DNA from: Octopus sinensis | Lineage: Eukaryota | Assembly: GCF_006345805.1 (NCBI RefSeq) | Contig: NW_021826116.1 | Location: forward strand, 1 to 13,717 | Direction of reading: 5' to 3' | Length of the DNA stretch: 13,717 nucleotides | Part shown: positions 45 through 10,022 of the stretch, piece by piece | Position numbering within the stretch: position 1 is the stretch's first letter | How the letters are laid out: the number at the start of each line of letters is the position of its first letter | The notes under the pieces: model-generated | What the model was told of the DNA's origin: nothing | Databases searched by the model: none | The model's input: the letters and a program-made list of their open reading frames with translations, nothing else | Translations under genes and position numbers: made by a program

Positions 45-281
45 TACCTATTTCGTTACTACCCACAAGGGACTAAACACAGAGAGGACAAACAAGGACA
101 GACAAACGGATTAAGTCGAGTACATCGACCCCAGTGCGTAACTGGTAGTTATTTAATCGACCCAGAAAGGATGAAAGGCAAAGTCGACCTCGGCGGAATT
201 TCAACTCAGAACGTAGCGGCAGACGAAATACCGCTAAGCATTTCGCCCGGCGTGCTAACGTTTCTGCCAGATCGCCGCCTT
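45..281 (-). mobile_element. tRNA-derived SINE, family 1, near full length
   Basis: Minus strand begins AAGGCGGCGATCTGGCAGAAACG (A-box-like), then GAGTTGAAATTCC (damaged B box) and a central GAGGTCGACTTTGCCTTTCATCCTTTCTGGGTCGATTAAATAACTACCAG block. A second diverged copy lies at 6441-6631. Recalled as an abundant octopus SINE; family name not verified. Confidence 0.85.
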
Positions 282-1059
282 AAACCAGTTTCTAATTACC
301 ATTGACAATATGAACTCCCTGCTAGTGGGGTATTAATTTTGCCATCCAAGAACTCAGAACTTGAAAAGCTGCAACAAATACTACAGAACTTTTTTCGCCA
401 TGCACTAATTATCCTGTTGAAATTCATTCTCTTACAAAATCTTACAAATAAAATAAATGAATAAATAAAAGACATTTTAAAACATACATCAATATAAACA
501 CAACAGCACATACCGCAGCATTCCAAATTAAGTTCACTTTGGATGATAGAGGTGAATGTCTGATTAAATGTCAACCTTATTTAACATTGAAAGATATCAA
601 GGAGACCTTTTTGGGTAATCCCGTGTGTAAAGTAATTATTTCGTCAAAGATTGAATTAGGAAAAATTAGTAAAATGATTTTAAGTTAGGGAATTTAAAAA
701 AATTACAGGACACTGCTTTACGTTCATAAAATAACGGAATGTCAGTAACCAAACGTTTTAATAGCTAACAGGATAAACATAAAACTAAATTCAACTTGAC
801 ATGGTAGAAGTATATCCATTCTGTGCTTTTATATATTTCGAATGATGTCGTTCGTTCTCTAATATGAAGAATATTGGTATTAAAGATATAATGAATGCTA
901 GAAGATTTTTCTTCTAATTCAGCGGTAATGGCATTTTCGATGTTGCTACGTTAAATATGGTGGAGCAAAGATTTTCGATTTTGGAGAAGTATTTCTTATG
1001 TATACAGTTCAAACAAAACATAGGTCTGAACTTATCCCAACTCTGAAACTGATTTAAAG

Positions 1060-1771
1060 AAGGAGTTACATCAAATACAGAATAGAGAACACATCAAGAA
1101 GTGATGAATGCAGAATCTGTGGAAAAATGGTGAAACGGTATGGTATATTACCACTCAATGTACGCCACTAGCCCAGAAAGAATTTAAGAGACGTCATGAC
1201 AATATTGCAAGGATTGTTCATTGGACAATTTGCATCAAATATGGATTCGACAGAGCAAAAAAGTGGTACGAACATAAACCCCAAGGCATCATCGAATATG
1301 ATAAGGCAAAGATTCTATGGGATTTTATGATTCAGTGCGACTATGTGGTAAAGAATACGAAACCAGATATAGTGTTAATTGAGAAAGAAAGCAAACGATG
1401 CTGGATCATAGATATAGCGTGCCCAGCTGACAACAAGGTATACGATAAGGAAGAAAGAAAAGTCGATAGACATAACACGTTAGCTTGGGAGGTTAAGCAG
1501 TTGTGGTCGCTGAAAAAGGTGGTAGTAGTACCAATAATTGTTGGGGCCTTGAGAACAGTGTGTAAAAATCTTGAGAAGTACATGGAACAAATAAGAGCTG
1601 CAATAAGAGTGGAACACTTGGAGAAAACAGCACTGCTTGGAACCGCTGGAATACTTCGGATGGTGCTCGAAAAATAAACATTGTTGCATTAGTTCACTGG
1701 TTGTGAACAGCTGACACCGTACTTCATTTGCAGCGTTAGAAGCTGTGTAAAGACACTAAAAAAAAAAAAAA
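1060..1771 (+). mobile_element. 5'-truncated non-LTR retrotransposon, R4/Dong-like (RLE endonuclease), element A
   Basis: Encodes a zinc knuckle CRIC-x8-(H>Y)-x4-C, then RHDN, WDF..CD...KPDIVLIEKESKRCWIIDIACP (PD..D restriction-like endonuclease) and VVPIIVGALR. Stop at 1675-1677, ~80-nt 3' UTR, A14 at 1758-1771, then (TAA)n. Confidence 0.9.
1063..1677 (+). pseudogene. C-terminal fragment of the retrotransposon ORF (zinc knuckle + RLE) with one frameshift
   Basis: SYIKYRIENTSRSDECRICGK is read in one frame and joins the listed 1108..1677 ORF (NGETVWYITTQC...) by a 1-nt loss in the A5 run at 1123-1127. The RT domain is absent. Confidence 0.85.
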
Positions 1772-1793
1772 TAATAATAATAATAATAATAGA

Positions 1794-1829
<36 letters not shown>

Positions 1830-1936
1830 TAATAATAATATAATGATAATAATAATAATAATATAAAATAATAGTAATAATATTATAATAATAATAATAT
1901 AATAATAATAGTAATAATAATAATAAAATAATAATA

Positions 1937-1971
<35 letters not shown>

Positions 1972-2045
1972 GTATAATAATAATAATAATAATAATATAA
2001 TAATAATAATAATAATATAAAATAATAATATAATAATAATAGTAA

Positions 2046-2078
<33 letters not shown>

Positions 2079-2085
2079 AATAATC

Positions 2086-2127
<42 letters not shown>

Positions 2128-2227
2128 GTAATAATCAAATAATAATAATAATCTATAATAATAGTAATATAATAATAATATAATAATAATAATAATAATA
2201 ATAATATAATTACATAATATAATAATA
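1758..2227. repeat. A14 plus ~455-bp degenerate (TAA)n microsatellite
   Basis: TAA units with TAATA, TAAAA and TAG variants. Source of the poly-Ile/Leu/Tyr pseudo-ORF 1689..2234. Confidence 0.97.
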
Positions 2228-2228
2228 C

Positions 2229-3548
2229 GTCCACAGGCTCTATCTCCCCCGAAACGAAGGCGCCAGAGGCCTAATTCATTTTGAAATGTCCTATAAAACT
2301 ACCACAATAGGACTTTAAGTGTACATCCAAACTAACACCGACTGGATGATACAGCTGGTAAGGCTACACGAACAGATTAAGAAAACTGTACTTAATCTAA
2401 AAGAAGATATATAAATACAGACGAGAGCTTAACCTGCCAGATTAGGATGGTGATAAGGAAGACGTATCACCCACTAAGGGAGCAAAAAAGTGTGAAAAAA
2501 ACCAAGCAGGACAGCTTGTAGATAAAAGCAAGAAAGAAAGACCCTCGCATGGGCAATACTCCAAACGAGCTGAGGAAGCTGAGGTAGATATAAGAAAACC
2601 CATCAGTGACTGAAGTGTTGGTTTGAAAGCGGAAACAGAAGCATACGTCCGAGCAACAGCGTCTCTTCACTTGGAAGTATTAAGCTAATGCCACACAATG
2701 AGGTAGAAACAAAGTGTGCAACCTGCAATGATAAACTCGAGAGTATTGACCACATTCTTGTCGGTTGTTCATTGCACACTTTGCATCAAATATGGATTTG
2801 ACAGAGCAAAAAAATTGGTACGAACATAAACCCCAAGACATCATCGAATTTGATAAGGCAAAGATTCTATGGGATTTTATGATTCAGTGCGACCATGAGG
2901 TAAAGAATACGAAACCAGATATAGTGTTAATTAAGAAAGAAAGAAAGCAAACGATACTGGATCATAGATATAGTCCTTGCCCCTACAGAATATGGAACCA
3001 GACATGATCGTGTTGGCCAATGCTTGTAATGGAACGTATGTCGTCACTATGGTATCCCGCACCCTAAGGACTGGTATGAACACCATCACTGAGGGAGAGA
3101 ATGTTAGCATCCTATGAGATAACGGAATATATACAGACAGGCAAACACATGTTAACAGAACAGACATCGTCATCAAAGAAGCCAAAACAAAAAAAAACAT
3201 GCTTGTTAATTGATATGACAGTGCCGACTGATAGAAAGATTTCAGCAAAGGGATTTGGAAAACTGTCGAAATATAAGGACCTTAAGATTGAGATAACTAG
3301 GACATAGCAATTAAAAACCAAAACCATTCTTGTTGGTGCTCTGGGAATGATCAAGAATGTTCCTGACAGATATTTTTACCTGATCCCTGGAAAACCAACA
3401 ATCTATAAGATTTAAGAAATTGTGTTGACATCAACCACCCATAGTCTCAAGACGTTTATCCCCATCTAATATATATATATATATGTAAGTTAAGTCTCTG
3501 GTTGAGACCCATTCAAAAGAAGAAATATAATGCAATTTAACCGCAAAG
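2229..3548 (+). mobile_element. 5'-truncated, decayed R4/Dong-like non-LTR retrotransposon, element B (different family from A)
   Basis: VHRLYLPRNEGARGL (post-RT motif, 2229-2273), PSHGQY, GLKAETE, intact CATC-x8-H-x4-C (2715-2768), LAPTEYGTRHDRVGQ, WYEH, TDIVIKE..TCLLIDMTVP..KLSKYKDL, VGALG. Many stops and frameshifts; ORF stop at 3467-3469; 3' UTR, then (GAT)/(AAT)n. Confidence 0.9.
2765..2973 (+). mobile_element. Internal fragment of the element-A family embedded in element B
   Basis: Aligns by eye to 1214-1417 with 10 substitutions, a 1-nt insertion and a 4-nt (GAAA) insertion, about 95% identity. Confidence 0.93.
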
Positions 3549-3565
3549 TGATGATGATGAGGATA

Positions 3566-3600
<35 letters not shown>

Positions 3601-3614
3601 AATGATAATAATAA

Positions 3615-3652
<38 letters not shown>

Positions 3653-3678
3653 AGAGTAGTAGTAGTAGTAGTAGTAAT

Positions 3679-3736
<58 letters not shown>
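3549..3736. repeat. Compound trinucleotide microsatellite (TGA)4-(AAT/GAT)n-(AGT)n
   Basis: Directly visible; AGT starts at 3616. Source of pseudo-ORFs 3530..3790 and 3537..3788. Confidence 0.97.
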
Positions 3737-3740
<4 letters not shown>

Positions 3741-4328
3741 CAATAACGATTTCCTATAGTTTTCCAGAAAATCTCGACACTTCAGCATGAAGTATCAATA
3801 CAAGAAAACATACAAATACAAATACAAGCGTAAACGGTAGAGAACCACAAGCAAATCTGAAACTGTATCATCCCCGCTTTTTGCCCCCTCATTGTAATCC
3901 ATTGTTAAAAGCGTTGCTGTTATCGCGCCTGATGATAGAGAAAAACAGTATATCGGTTGCACAGGCCTTTGCTTTGAAAACGGATAAACAGAATATCAAT
4001 ACTCCTTCACATATCCAGAACACAGAAACAATGAGTCATTTTCCAAATATATCTGAAGACGTAATAAACAAAAATTACACAAATTTATTGAAACTAACCA
4101 TTTATTCAAAAGTCAATTCACACAAAATAAGACAGAAATCTGGGTTCTTAACAAAGGATTTTATGGTATTGAATATGACGTTGCATCAGGATTTAAAATG
4201 TTGACAGAGCAAGGATGTTCCTTTTTTTTTTTTTGGTTTTTGCTCCGACTACGGATGGACTAAATACCCTGATTTATAGATTTATATACACAGATCACCT
4301 TGTACACACACATTCACGCACATGTAAG

Positions 4329-4342
4329 TCTCTCTCTCTCTC

Positions 4343-4381
<39 letters not shown>

Positions 4382-4424
4382 ATTATATATATATATATAT
4401 ATATATAACAAGAGAGAGAGAGAG
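4329..4424. repeat. Compound (TC)n-(TA)n-(AG)n microsatellite
   Basis: Directly visible. Confidence 0.97.
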
Positions 4425-4440
4425 TAAAAGAATATGTATA

Positions 4441-4607
4441 GACGCAGGTGTGGCTGTGTGATAAGTAGCTTGCATACCAACGACATGTTTTCTGGGTTCA
4501 ATCCCACTGCGAGGCACCTTAGGCAAATGTTTTCTATTATAGCCTCCGGTCGACCAACAACTTCTTAAGTGGATATGGTAATCGGAAATTGAAAGAAGCC
4601 CGTCGCA

Positions 4608-4662
<55 letters not shown>

Positions 4663-4878
4663 GATATGTGTGTGTGTGTGTATCTCTGTTTGTCCCTCCA
4701 CCATCGCTTGACAACCGATGTTGGTGTGTTTAAGTCCCCGTAACTTAGCGGTTCAGCAAAAGAGAGCGATACAATAAGTACTAGGTTTACAAAAAATAAA
4801 TCCTATAGTCGATTTGCTCGATTAAACGCTGTGCTCCAGTTTGGCCGCAGCCAAATGAATGAAAGAAATAAAAGAATA
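4441..4878 (+). mobile_element. tRNA-derived SINE, family 2 (CORE-like domain), full length with internal microsatellite
   Basis: A-box-like TGGCTGTGTG, B box GGTTCAATCCC at 4495-4505, CORE-like GGCACCTTAGGCAAATG, internal (CT)n(AT)n(GT)n and an AAAAGA-type tail. Homologous copies at 9561-9980 and 12689-12830. Confidence 0.9.
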
Positions 4879-4898
4879 TGCACATTCATCTTTGCATA

Positions 4899-5800
4899 TA
4901 GGTTAGGTGAAATGTCAGTAGGCATTGAAGATTGCTGATCGAATTTCTAGCATCACTGAAGCCTGAAGCCACGACGAAAACATTTTTTAAACTGAAAAAA
5001 CTAATGTGGAATTTTTTTGCTTTCTTCTTACTGTTTTATTTCTTCTTTCTTAATTCCCAGATGCCCGGTCGCTTGATTGTTCAAGAGCGAGCAAAGACAG
5101 CAGCACGCTTCGAAGTGTGGAATTGCATTGTTTTGGTTCAGGCATGGTGGCATGCATGGAAAGGTAAACATGCAACAACACTACGTCCGGGTTAGAATAA
5201 AAAAAGTTGTCATGCAAAGCTGATGACCACGGCTCTGCGAACGATGCAAGAAGTGGAAGTTCAACCATATTCCGATCAGCGGAGAACGTGTCAACAGGAA
5301 ATGTTGAATTGCAACATGCAAAAATCAACACGTGAAGCAGCTCATTAAAGTGGACTAACAAGACAAACAATACATACTGTGTTGCATGAAGAAGTGAATA
5401 TTCGTCCGTGGATACCCCACTACGTGCAGGAGCTAAAACCTGAAGGCTGCGACGGCAGAGGTCCAGAAGTTCAGATCTCACTCCATTTGATTTTTACCTG
5501 TGGGGTTACACAAAAGAGGAGTTGTACACGACAAAACGTCGCACACTGGAGGACATGGGGACACGGATTCAGAAGGTTCTCAATGACATCACAGACGACG
5601 TCCTTCAGAAGGTTATTCGTTCCATCGTTGGCCGTTTGAGGAAGCTGATTGACACCACCGCTTCTTACGTTGAAATAGGAAGATTTACTTTCATTTTCCC
5701 AAGTAATAAAGAACATGTATCATTTGTTTCAATAAGTTCGTTAAAGAAATATGGATCTTATTATGCATCCTTAATGCGTACTTAATTTTCACTCACCCTG
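4899..5800 (+). mobile_element. Tc1/mariner-superfamily DNA transposon, internally deleted (DD..D type)
   Basis: Degenerate 28-bp TIRs (4899-4926 vs reverse complement of 5773-5800, CAGGGTGAGTGAAAATTAAGTACGCATT; 20/28 match), TA on both sides. Decayed N-terminal HTH from ATG 5061 (MPGRLIVQERAK..KSTREAA..GLTRQTIHTVL..RPWIPHYVQELKPE) is fused near 5451-5465 to the C-terminal RSSDLTPFDFYLWGYTKEELY. Confidence 0.9.
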
Positions 5801-5995
<195 letters not shown>

Positions 5996-6440: not shown

Positions 6441-6631
6441 GTTTCAAATTTTGGCACAAGGTCAGTAATTTCTGGGGAGGAATATGTGGATTAAATAGAA
6501 ACCAGTGCTCAACTGGTACTTATATTATCGACGCTGAAAGGATGGCAGGAGAAGTCGACCTCAGCGGAATTCAAACTCGGAACGTAAAGATAGAAGAAAT
6601 GCCAATAAGCATTTTGACAGTTTACCGCCTT
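6441..6631 (-). mobile_element. tRNA-derived SINE, family 1, diverged copy with internal deletion
   Basis: CCAGTGCTCAACTGGTACTTATATTATCGACGCTGAAAGGATGGCAGGAGAAGTCGACCTCAGCGGAATTCAAACTCGGAACGTA aligns to 131-215. Ends in CCGCCTT like 275-281. Confidence 0.85.
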
Positions 6632-6919: not shown

Positions 6920-7726
6920 TTATAGAAAGAAGCTTTAAAAGAATGTGGATTAAAACACAGTGGTTGGAAATACCATGCTTTATAAGTGATTTCGTTAAGT
7001 CCAGCTTTTCAAACGCTCTTAGTGTATGGTAATTCGCACGGCGGCAATAATTGTATGGTAGAAGTTGTCAATATTCCTGATTTAGTTTCTGATTGAGAAT
7101 CGCATAAAATATTCTTTTTATCATTCATAAGTGATAACTTTACTCCTACGCATTCAAAGGAAAAGGATATTTTCAATTTTCTATTCGTACAAGTATCTGG
7201 ATGCTTACCAAATGGAACATCTTTATTAAATGGATCTTTGACTTGTTGTTTATATGATCTACTAATTTTCTTCATTCTTCGCCGATATGATTATCGCTGC
7301 TTAGTGAAAAAATAATGCAGTAAATTATCTGAAATTCTCATTTTCATAAACCCGAAACCCTTCTCCTTTTATGATAATCGTTTTGATTTCAATCTGTAAT
7401 CATAATCACACGTTCTGCAACGAAGGGCTTTACGTTGTCTTACCTCTGTCATTTCTTTTCCCGCTTAGAATTCCGCCCTTGCTAGGAGATTTCTATGGCT
7501 TTGTAATTGTCTTCCATTTATGAATTTTGACACATTAATGATTTACTTTAGATTCCGTGACTGATTTAAAATTGCAAGTTATAATTTGCCCAAATATACG
7601 GTACAGTGGTTTCGAGAATTATAGGTGAATATTTCTGGGTGGGTGCTCCTTGAGAGATTTTCGTTGTAACACAGGGATTAGGATGTATTTTACCTCATTT
7701 ATGACATTAATCATTAGGCTTTACAG

Positions 7727-8861: not shown

Positions 8862-9255
8862 TCTTTATATATAAAAGTGAAGTTGTGTCTGTCTCCGACG
8901 ATTTAGATTCCAAACTACTCCCACATTTTGCGGTGCAGTTTAACCAAAACCGGGTATCTTATGGATCGTGATTTATATCGAGCCCTTCTGGGTATTAGCG
9001 CGCGTCTACGATGAGTCTACGATTTAAAAAAAATTTACCATCATTTTTTTCCATTTTGATGCATTTTTTTGCTATTATATAAGGGAAGTAACTCCCTAAA
9101 AATGTCTACGATGAGTCAACGATTTAAAATATAATTTACCATAATTTTTTTCCATTTTTAATGCATTTTTTTGCTATTTTTGGCTATAACTCTCTAAAAA
9201 TGCCTATATAGTTATTTCCCTTACAAACCCGAGCAACGCCGGGCGATACTGCTAG
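8862..9255 (+). mobile_element. Non-autonomous Helitron (394 bp)
   Basis: Starts TC after A8861 (TCTTTATATATAAAAG). 3' hairpin CCCGAGCAACGCCGGG at 9228-9243, 8-nt spacer, terminal CTAG at 9252-9255, followed by T. No TSD. Confidence 0.9.
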
Positions 9256-9560: not shown

Positions 9561-9777
9561 CTCTTTTACTCTTTAACTCGTTTCAGTCATTTGACTGTGA
9601 CTATGCTTGAGCACCGCATTTAGTCAAGCAAAATTGGCACCAGGACATATTCTTTGTAAGCCTAGTACTTATTCTATCGGTCCCTTTTGTCGAACCGGTA
9701 AGATACGGGGACGTAAACACACCAGCATCGGTTGTCAAGCTATGATGGGGGGGGGACAAACACAGACGCACAAACAT

Positions 9778-9808
<31 letters not shown>

Positions 9809-9980
9809 TATATATCTGTATATACATACACATATACGGCGAGATTCTTTCAGTTTCCGTCTACCAAATCCATTCACAAGGCTTTGGTCGGCCCGAGGCT
9901 ATAGGTGCCACGCAGTGGGACTGAACTCGGAACCATGTGGTTGGTAAGCAAGCTACTTACCACACAGCCACTCCTAGGCC
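9561..9980 (-). mobile_element. tRNA-derived SINE, family 2, full length with a 19-nt deletion in the CORE-like segment
   Basis: Reverse complement aligns along its length to 4441-4878; B box GAGTTCAGTCCC at 9928-9917; internal (TA)/(GT) tract. Confidence 0.92.
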
Positions 9981-9982
9981 TA

Positions 9983-9986
9983 TGTA

Positions 9987-10022
<36 letters not shown>

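What the first reader, a model, noticed from the sequence alone, without database searches (positions are those of the whole stretch)
2765..2973. Precise 209-bp patch of one retrotransposon family inserted inside a different family, with junction microhomology
Seen: B reads ..HILVG TGT TCA | insert | GTC CTT GCC CCT ACA GAA TAT. Removing the insert restores a continuous GCSVLAPTEY-GTRHDRV zinc-knuckle exit with no evident host loss and no TSD. The insert is ~95% identical to an internal part of element A 1.5 kb upstream (1214-1417). The left junction shares TTGTTCA between host and donor; the right shares AG, and both continue into TGCCC. The patch is neither a 3' end nor tailed, so it is not an ordinary retrotransposition. 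Inference: either a double template switch of the reverse transcriptase between two families' RNAs, or a templated insertion during microhomology-mediated break repair, possibly copied from the neighbour. This is direct evidence of inter-family sequence exchange.
Basis: partly seen in the sequence, partly recalled or inferred. Interest (0 to 1): 0.78.

Follow-up and report, generated by a model that had tools for sequence, protein, structure and literature searches.

The report
Break-repair patch inside a dead retrotransposon
A 201-base piece of one jumping-gene family sits precisely inside an old, dead copy of a related family; it looks like a repair scar copied from the neighbouring element 1.5 kb away, which is a known and ordinary kind of mutation.

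Summary
Window 2772-2972 is a net insertion of 201 bp. The match to element A runs over 2765-2973 once the junction microhomologies are counted, and it is 95.6% identical to A at 1214-1417. It interrupts element B exactly. An independent B-family copy (L002) and all B-like proteins read straight through the site (GCS|VLAPTEY), with no loss, no duplication and no tail. The junctions share 7 bp (TTGTTCA) on the left and 2 bp (AG) on the right.

A and B are both 5'-truncated R2-type LINEs with a CCHC knuckle and a restriction-like endonuclease. They look Dong/R4-like and are stacked head to tail in one (TAA)n array.

The patch is about 3-fold less decayed than B, so it entered a B copy that was already dead. 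It was not made when B retrotransposed. It is out of frame and stops B's reading frame 10 codons after the junction, so a chimeric master element is unlikely.

The best reading is a microhomology-primed templated insertion at a break or stalled fork, most likely copied from the neighbouring A. The main rival is a patch copied from A RNA or cDNA. This is a new instance of a known kind of event, and interest is low. The copy-number test on the junctions could not be run, because the host genome is in none of the collections.

The parts
1058..1758 (+). Element A: a 5'-truncated R2-type (RLE) LINE copy. The ORF 3' end (CCHC knuckle plus restriction-like endonuclease, stop at 1675-1677) is followed by the 3' UTR. 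The true 5' end is probably near 1020.
   Evidence: tblastn to the A-like ORF of L001: 71% aa identity over 128 aa. 77% nt identity to L001:6423-7044. Open 189-aa ORF at 1108-1677. Profile match to R2 proteins in the PDB.
1214..1220 (+). Donor-side microhomology TTGTTCA.
   Evidence: It is the only + strand TTGTTCA upstream of the break within the window.
1221..1416 (+). The segment of A (196 nt) that matches the patch. It is the proposed template, or a close relative of the template.
1759..2227 (+). A-run followed by a degenerate (AAT)n array. This is A's tail and the shared (TAA)n target array, and it abuts B's 5' end.
   Evidence: TRF: 1770-2227, period 3, 158 copies.
2228..2771 (+). Element B, left part. 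A 5'-truncated, heavily decayed R2-type LINE copy that ends in the zinc knuckle ...HILVGCS.
   Evidence: tblastn to the B-like ORF of L001 from aa 281. L002 matches 2534-2771.
2765..2771 (+). Left-junction microhomology TTGTTCA, shared by B and A.
2772..2972 (+). The A-derived patch, a net insertion of 201 bp. It was 196 nt at origin and has gained 1 nt and 4 nt by slippage-type insertions.
   Evidence: Absent from L002 and from all B-like proteins.
2972..2973 (+). Right-junction microhomology AG.
2973..3562 (+). Element B, right part. VLAPTEY..RHDRV.., the RLE domain, the ORF end near 3467 and the 3' UTR.
   Evidence: L002 matches 2972-3558, continuing directly from its match to the left part. 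tblastn.
3563..3740 (+). (ATA)n then (TAG)n microsatellite at B's 3' end.
   Evidence: TRF.

Best explanation
A chromosome break, or a collapsed replication fork, occurred inside an already inactive copy of LINE family B, between TCA (2771) and GTC (2973). The left 3' end (...GGTTGTTCA) paired through 7 nt of microhomology with the TTGTTCA of the family-A copy 1.55 kb upstream in the same orientation, on the same molecule or on the sister chromatid. A polymerase then copied about 196 nt of A. The extended end came off the template and was joined to the other side of the break through 1-2 nt (AG). The result is a templated 'filler' insertion with no loss, no duplication and no tail. This is the outcome expected from synthesis-dependent microhomology-mediated end joining or a microhomology-mediated template switch (MMBIR/FoSTeS type). 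What is shown: the precise insertion, the microhomologies, the family-A origin, the patch being younger than B, and the chimera being non-functional. What is inferred: that the break was repaired at the DNA level, and that the neighbouring copy, not another A copy or A RNA, was the template. A and B are neighbours because both are Dong/R4-like LINEs that pile up in the same (TAA)n array.
For: (1) The insertion is exact. L002 and B-like proteins run straight through the site. The two ends of one break are adjacent by definition, so exact contiguity needs no coincidence. (2) The 7-nt microhomology lies at non-homologous codons of A and B. The donor site is the only + strand TTGTTCA upstream of the break in the window. 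(3) The patch is younger than its host. B carries 8 in-frame stops and at least 4 frameshifts. Its terminal branch against L002, with L001 as outgroup, is at least 9.2%. Eight or more stops have P = 0.003 at 5% decay. The patch has only 5-6 derived substitutions in 196 nt (2.6-3.1%), which has P = 0.005 to 0.0001 at 8-11% decay. (4) The differences between patch and neighbour split about evenly when polarised with four outgroup copies: the patch has 5 substitutions plus 2 indels, the neighbour has 4 substitutions, and 1 is ambiguous. This is expected if one was copied from the other and both then decayed. (5) The donor family lies 1.55 kb away in direct orientation. (6) The patch is +1 out of frame, was 196 nt at origin, and brings a stop 10 codons after the junction. 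It therefore fits a scar and not a working chimera. (7) The same signature (no TSD, no poly(A), junction microhomology) defines the double-strand-break 'patch' insertions described in humans (class 2 TSIPs, PMC5110952).
Against: Templated insertions made by polymerase theta are usually much shorter than 200 nt (own knowledge). Seven nucleotides is weak for invading a duplex 1.5 kb away. No defect private to the neighbour, such as a stop or a frameshift, is shared with the patch, so the neighbour is not proven to be the template. An A-family consensus from the same genome was not available. Two indels in 201 bp is a high density for a young patch, although both sit in slippage-prone runs (A7 and GAAAGAAAG). 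Because A and B both accumulate in (TAA)n arrays, an A copy next to B is less of a coincidence than it first seems.
Confidence: 0.58

Rival explanations
1. RNA-templated patch. A break in the dead B copy was repaired by reverse transcription of family-A RNA, or by capture of an A cDNA fragment. This resembles endonuclease-independent LINE insertion and class 2 TSIPs. The bottom-strand 3' end primed internally on A RNA with 1-2 nt (the right junction), and the 5' end was attached through the 7-nt microhomology (the left junction). The event may have happened during the same episode that inserted the neighbouring A copy.
For: No TSD, no tail and junction microhomology match the class 2 TSIP description, whose authors attribute those insertions to cDNA patches (PMC5110952). 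The asymmetry of a short 3' and a longer 5' microhomology fits how LINE 5' ends are attached (own knowledge). Dong-R4 LINEs are reported as recently active in octopus (PMC13282606), and A has a long open ORF. The neighbour's derived changes inside the patch region (4 in 196 nt) are about as dense as its detectable decay elsewhere. That would fit a split at about the time the neighbour inserted.
Against: It treats the A copy 1.55 kb away in the same orientation as coincidental or only loosely linked. Nothing in the sequence requires an RNA intermediate. It cannot be separated from the DNA-templated model with one A copy.
Confidence: 0.27
2. Chimeric cDNA. While B was being reverse-transcribed, the reverse transcriptase jumped from B RNA to A RNA and back, so the patch arrived together with B. 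It could have founded a chimeric subfamily.
For: R2-type reverse transcriptases are known for template jumping (own knowledge). Microhomology is present at both junctions.
Against: The patch is about 3-fold less decayed than B. The return is to the exact next nucleotide of B. Known R2 jumps are end to end, not internal to internal (own knowledge). The chimera is out of frame and truncates the endonuclease domain. The only other B-family copy recovered lacks the patch.
Confidence: 0.07
3. Assembly or read artefact: a mis-join that places an A fragment inside B.
For: The region is full of repeats and microsatellites. No reads were available.
Against: The patch has its own 9-10 substitutions and 2 indels relative to the neighbour, so it is a distinct sequence. 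An artefact would need two joins that restore B to the nucleotide, and both joins would have to fall at microhomologies.
Confidence: 0.04
4. An ordinary nested retrotransposition of A into B, followed by a deletion that removed A's 3' part and tail.
For: Nested LINE insertions are common in this kind of region.
Against: The deletion would have to end exactly at the original insertion point, leaving no TSD, no tail remnant and no loss of B.
Confidence: 0.02

Closest known systems
Class 2 templated sequence insertion polymorphisms (TSIPs) and filler-DNA patches at double-strand breaks
   Same: A short internal piece of sequence from elsewhere is inserted with no target-site duplication and no poly(A), and with microhomology at the junctions (PMC5110952).
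   Different: TSIP donors are described as distant loci copied through RNA. Here a copy of the donor family lies 1.55 kb away in the same orientation, and no RNA step is needed.
Synthesis-dependent microhomology-mediated end joining, polymerase-theta templated insertions, and MMBIR/FoSTeS template switches
   Same: A 3' end primes on a nearby template through a few bases of microhomology, copies it, and rejoins through microhomology (PMC7165422, PMC9303309; MMBIR from own knowledge).
   Different: Typical polymerase-theta inserts are a few to tens of bases. At about 196 nt this one is at the long end, closer to MMBIR-type switches. The enzyme cannot be inferred from the sequence.
Endonuclease-independent LINE insertion and capture of retrotransposon cDNA at breaks
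   Same: A LINE-derived fragment lacking a 3' end, a tail and a TSD sits at a presumed break (cited within PMC5110952; otherwise own knowledge).
   Different: An RNA origin is not shown here, and the fragment is internal at both ends.
Dong / R4-clade (TAA)n-targeting RLE LINEs
   Same: A and B carry the C-terminal CCHC knuckle and restriction-like endonuclease of R2-type elements. They are bounded by (TAA)n, as are their relatives in L001. Dong elements target TAA microsatellites, including in a snail (PMC3812793), and Dong-R4 is abundant in octopus (PMC13282606, PMC8967140).
   Different: Only the 3' thirds are present. No reverse-transcriptase phylogeny was done, so clade membership is inferred and not tested.

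Membership tests
Templated (filler) insertion at a DNA break | The inserted sequence is a copy of sequence found elsewhere in the genome | tested here: met
   95.6% identity to 1214-1417.
Templated (filler) insertion at a DNA break | No target-site duplication, no poly(A) or 3' end of the donor element, and little or no loss at the recipient | tested here: met
   The empty site is reconstructed exactly against L002 and B-like proteins.
Templated (filler) insertion at a DNA break | Microhomology between the recipient ends and the donor at the junctions | tested here: met
   7 nt on the left and 2 nt on the right. The 7-mer lies at non-homologous codons.
Templated (filler) insertion at a DNA break | The event happened in resident genomic DNA, not while the recipient element was being made | tested here: met
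   The patch has 2.6-3.1% derived changes. B has at least 8-9% decay and 8 stops. The test is statistical and rests on a small region.
Templated (filler) insertion at a DNA break | The neighbouring copy is the actual template (it shares private mutations and is the closest of all A copies) | not testable with these tools
   The host genome is absent from the collections. Only the roughly symmetric divergence is available.
Chimeric LINE made by reverse-transcriptase template switching | The foreign segment is as old as the host copy | tested here: not met
Chimeric LINE made by reverse-transcriptase template switching | The junctions recur in several genomic copies (a propagating chimera) | not testable with these tools
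   The genome is not available. The one other B-family copy found lacks the patch. The chimera is out of frame.
R2-supergroup (RLE) non-LTR retrotransposon | A C-terminal CCHC zinc knuckle followed by a PD-(D/E)xK restriction-like endonuclease, homologous to that of R2 | tested here: met
   A profile of A-like and B-like proteins matches R2 proteins 9nl3_A and 9dou_A (E = 6.5e-7 and 1.1e-6) across the knuckle and the KPD...D...K region. Weak zf-RVT hit.
R2-supergroup (RLE) non-LTR retrotransposon | A reverse-transcriptase domain upstream in the same ORF | tested here: met
   Not present in the truncated window copies. In L001, the B-like ORF at 3869-5776 covers the called gene 3911-5776, which is annotated RVT_1, and it ends in the same C-terminal domain.
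Dong / R4 clade | Insertion into (TAA)n microsatellites | tested here: met
   (AAT)n on both sides of A and B in the window, and between stacked relatives in L001. The data do not separate a target array from an element-borne tail.
Dong / R4 clade | Placement within R4/Dong in a reverse-transcriptase phylogeny | not tested
   There is no RT sequence in the window and no reference set at hand.

The most novel reading that the evidence does not exclude
The patch and the neighbouring A copy are two products of one retrotransposition episode. While an A ribonucleoprotein was inserting A into the (TAA)n array beside B, its RNA or nascent cDNA was also used, through 7-nt and 2-nt microhomologies, to patch a collateral break about 0.5 kb away inside B. 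That would be a natural record of an R2-type LINE causing, and then templating the repair of, off-target damage next to its insertion site.
Probability: 0.1. Interest if true: 0.5.

Novelty: new member of a known kind. Interest (0 to 1): 0.22.

Why it matters
The locus is a clean natural example of a templated patch insertion. The empty site can be reconstructed to the nucleotide, and a donor-family copy lies next door. It shows that stacked LINE copies in microsatellite arrays can exchange pieces through repair, without homologous recombination or retrotransposition. The practical value is for annotation. Such patches can pass for 'recombinant' or 'chimeric' transposon families, so they should be checked for age, reading frame and copy number before anyone calls them inter-family exchange. 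The locus does not open a new mechanism or a new class of element.

Tried and rejected
(1) Copy number of the junctions and a tree of A copies could not be done. The best A-family protein in the 5.8-billion-protein database is only 66-72% identical. The best B-family protein is 56-57% identical. An exact 30-mer shared by the patch and A has no match in the metagenome contigs. Neither window ORF (A's 189 aa, or the 80-aa ORF spanning the right junction) is on record. I therefore did not spend the third protein search on the junction peptide.

(2) Shared 'odd' residues in the patch and the neighbour (T in place of R before KPD, Y in place of N in E-N) were considered as private mutations that would prove the neighbour is the donor. 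I rejected them because those columns are not conserved across the wider family.

(3) Gene conversion between homologous parts of A and B is rejected. The patch is added, not substituted, and it lies about 60 nt out of register with the homologous position.

(4) Duplication of B's own sequence is rejected. The patch is A-like (95.6%), not B-like.

(5) Pfam alone gave almost nothing for the C-terminal domain. The PDB profile search was what identified it.

(6) Rfam found nothing in the window.

(7) My first hand polarisation from protein alignments suggested a strong excess of patch-derived changes. Polarising at the DNA level with four outgroups corrected this to a roughly even split.

Full report
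**1. What is in the sequence**

The window looks like cephalopod DNA. It is rich in microsatellites and carries SINE-like and mariner-like fragments. The protein hits also include Octopus bimaculoides entries.

Two LINE 3' fragments lie head to tail on the + strand:
- Element A runs from about 1058 to 1758. It has an open 189-aa ORF that ends at 1677, followed by an A-run and 458 bp of degenerate (AAT)n at 1770-2227.
- Element B starts at 2228, directly after that array. It runs to about 3562 and is followed by (ATA)n and (TAG)n.

Window 2765-2973 matches A at 1214-1417 with 195 of 204 ungapped positions identical (95.6%). The patch has two extra stretches of 1 nt and 4 nt. This is the strongest non-simple repeat in the window.

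**2. The insertion is exact**

A B-family copy from an unrelated dataset (L002, a Logan contig of SRR3401912, about 74% nt identity) matches window 2534-2771 with its positions 55-299, and window 2972-3558 with its positions 299-891. It reads cggttgttcagtccatgcccc where the window reads cggttgttca[201 bp]gtccttgcccc.

In an alignment of 20 relatives of both families, the spacing from the last zinc-knuckle cysteine to the RHD motif is constant. B-like proteins read GCSVLAP.EY..RHD.

The net insert is 2772-2972. TTGTTCA (2765-2771) and AG (2972-2973) are shared between recipient and donor. TTGTTCA encodes G-C-S in B and I-V-H in A. It is therefore microhomology at non-homologous sites and not family homology. 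The TGCCC that follows the right junction is offset by 2 nt between A and B, so I treat it as chance.

**3. What A and B are**

Pfam gave only a weak zf-RVT hit. A profile of the aligned relatives matches solved R2 retrotransposon proteins (9nl3_A at E = 6.5e-7, 9dou_A at E = 1.1e-6). The match covers both the CCHC knuckle and the KPD...D...K restriction-like endonuclease.

In locus L001, from another organism, a B-like ORF covers a called gene annotated RVT_1 and ends in the same C-terminal domain. That locus holds at least three such elements stacked head to tail, with (TAA)n arrays between them.

Dong elements of the R4 clade are known to target TAA microsatellites, including in a snail (PMC3812793). 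RLE LINEs in general are target-specific (PMC4640811). Dong-R4 LINEs are abundant and recently active in octopus (PMC13282606, PMC8967140).

So A and B are best described as divergent Dong/R4-like lineages, about 28-30% aa identity in this domain. Sharing a (TAA)n array explains why they are neighbours. Clade membership was not tested by reverse-transcriptase phylogeny.

**4. Relative ages**

- B carries 8 stops in the homologous reading frame and at least 4 frameshifts over about 345 codons.
- With L001's B-like ORF as outgroup, B's terminal branch since its common ancestor with L002 is at least 9.2%, and L002's is 9.6%.
- I simulated neutral decay of an intact B-like ORF. Eight or more stops have probability 0.0003 at 3% decay, 0.003 at 5% and 0.03 at 8%.
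- Four A-like outgroup copies (L001, L003 and two in L004) polarise the differences between patch and neighbour. The patch lineage has 5 substitutions plus the two insertions. The neighbour lineage has 4 substitutions. One difference is ambiguous.
- Five to six derived substitutions in 196 nt (2.6-3.1%) is far fewer than the 16-22 expected if the patch were as old as B (Poisson P = 0.005 to 0.0001 at 8-11%).

The patch therefore entered a B copy that had already been decaying for some time. This argues against a chimeric cDNA formed when B retrotransposed.

The near-even split (5 against 4) is what a copy from the neighbour would give. It would also arise if both descend from the same active A lineage at about the same time.

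**5. Function of the chimera**

The patch is +1 out of frame relative to B, and 196 nt at origin is not a multiple of three. B's frame meets a stop 10 codons after the junction (HILVGCSLHTLHQIWI*). The whole endonuclease domain would be lost, so a self-propagating chimeric master is unlikely. 'Inter-family exchange' in any functional sense is not supported.

**6. Mechanism**

The simplest account is one break (or collapsed fork) between 2771 and 2973:
- The left 3' end, ...TTGTTCA, primes on the complementary strand at A's TTGTTCA.
- About 196 nt are copied.
- The new end is joined to the right side through AG.

Exact contiguity of the host sequence follows automatically from this account. Two independent RNA template switches would need a coincidence to produce it. 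The donor heptamer is the only + strand TTGTTCA upstream of the break in the window.

The signature of no TSD, no tail and junction microhomology is the one described for double-strand-break patch insertions in humans (class 2 TSIPs, PMC5110952). It is also the signature of microhomology-primed templated insertions (PMC7165422, PMC9303309).

The two patch-specific insertions lie in an A7 run and a GAAAGAAAG repeat. They may be slippage during low-fidelity synthesis or later mutations.

**7. The main rival and what I could not settle**

The same junctions fit an RNA-templated patch. In that case the bottom-strand end primes internally on A RNA through 1-2 nt, and the 5' end is attached through 7 nt, as in endonuclease-independent LINE insertion. 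It could even have happened during the episode that inserted the neighbouring A.

Separating this from DNA-templated copying needs the A-family consensus and copy tree from the host genome. That genome is in none of the collections I could search. No stop or frameshift private to the neighbour lies inside the copied segment, so there is no shared defect to use as proof.

My probabilities:
- DNA-level templated repair using the neighbour: about 0.58.
- Patch from A RNA or cDNA: about 0.27.
- Chimeric cDNA made at B's insertion: about 0.07.
- Assembly artefact: about 0.04.
- Nested insertion followed by a deletion: about 0.02.

**8. Verdict**

It is nonetheless one more instance of a known class of mutation, sitting in dead repeats. 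Interest is low (0.22).

The elements are non-LTR retrotransposons, not viruses, and only the two flanks were joined to show the empty site.

Noticed in passing
window 1058-3740; L001 517-7616: R2-type (RLE) LINE fragments of different lineages are stacked head to tail with (TAA)n arrays between them. This is seen in the window (A, (AAT)n, B, (ATA)n) and in an unrelated 4.4-Mb contig (at least three elements, with arrays at 517-664, 3702-3786, 5909-5948 and 7540-7616). It fits repeated Dong-like targeting of one microsatellite.
   Followed up: partly
window 108-243 and 6479-6614: Two copies of a SINE-like repeat in the same orientation, 77% identical. The sequence resembles repeats I recall from octopus genomes (memory only, not tested).
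   Followed up: no
window 4384-4878 and 9567-10020: A repeat of about 500 bp present twice in inverted orientation (70% identity). A 122-nt core at 4694-4815 and 9631-9752 is 83% complementary. It is probably another dispersed SINE-like element next to (TC)n and (TA)n tracts.
   Followed up: no
window 5040-5700: A stretch that looks by eye like a decayed DNA-transposase (mariner-like) fragment. No ORF or search was run on it.
   Followed up: no
window 9004-9206: A tandem duplication of about 100 bp (84% identity) inside an unidentified repeat at 8880-9250.
   Followed up: no
window 1108-1677: Element A keeps a 189-aa open frame through the whole endonuclease domain, although the zinc-knuckle histidine is replaced (ETVWY in place of ETVWH) and there is one frameshift just upstream. 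It is a much younger copy than B.
   Followed up: partly
L004 2480-3029 (-) and 5945-6494 (+): Two A-like copies in inverted orientation within 3 kb on another organism's contig. Both lack the segment that encodes ..RIVHW.. (a shared internal deletion of about 23 nt in the alignment).
   Followed up: no
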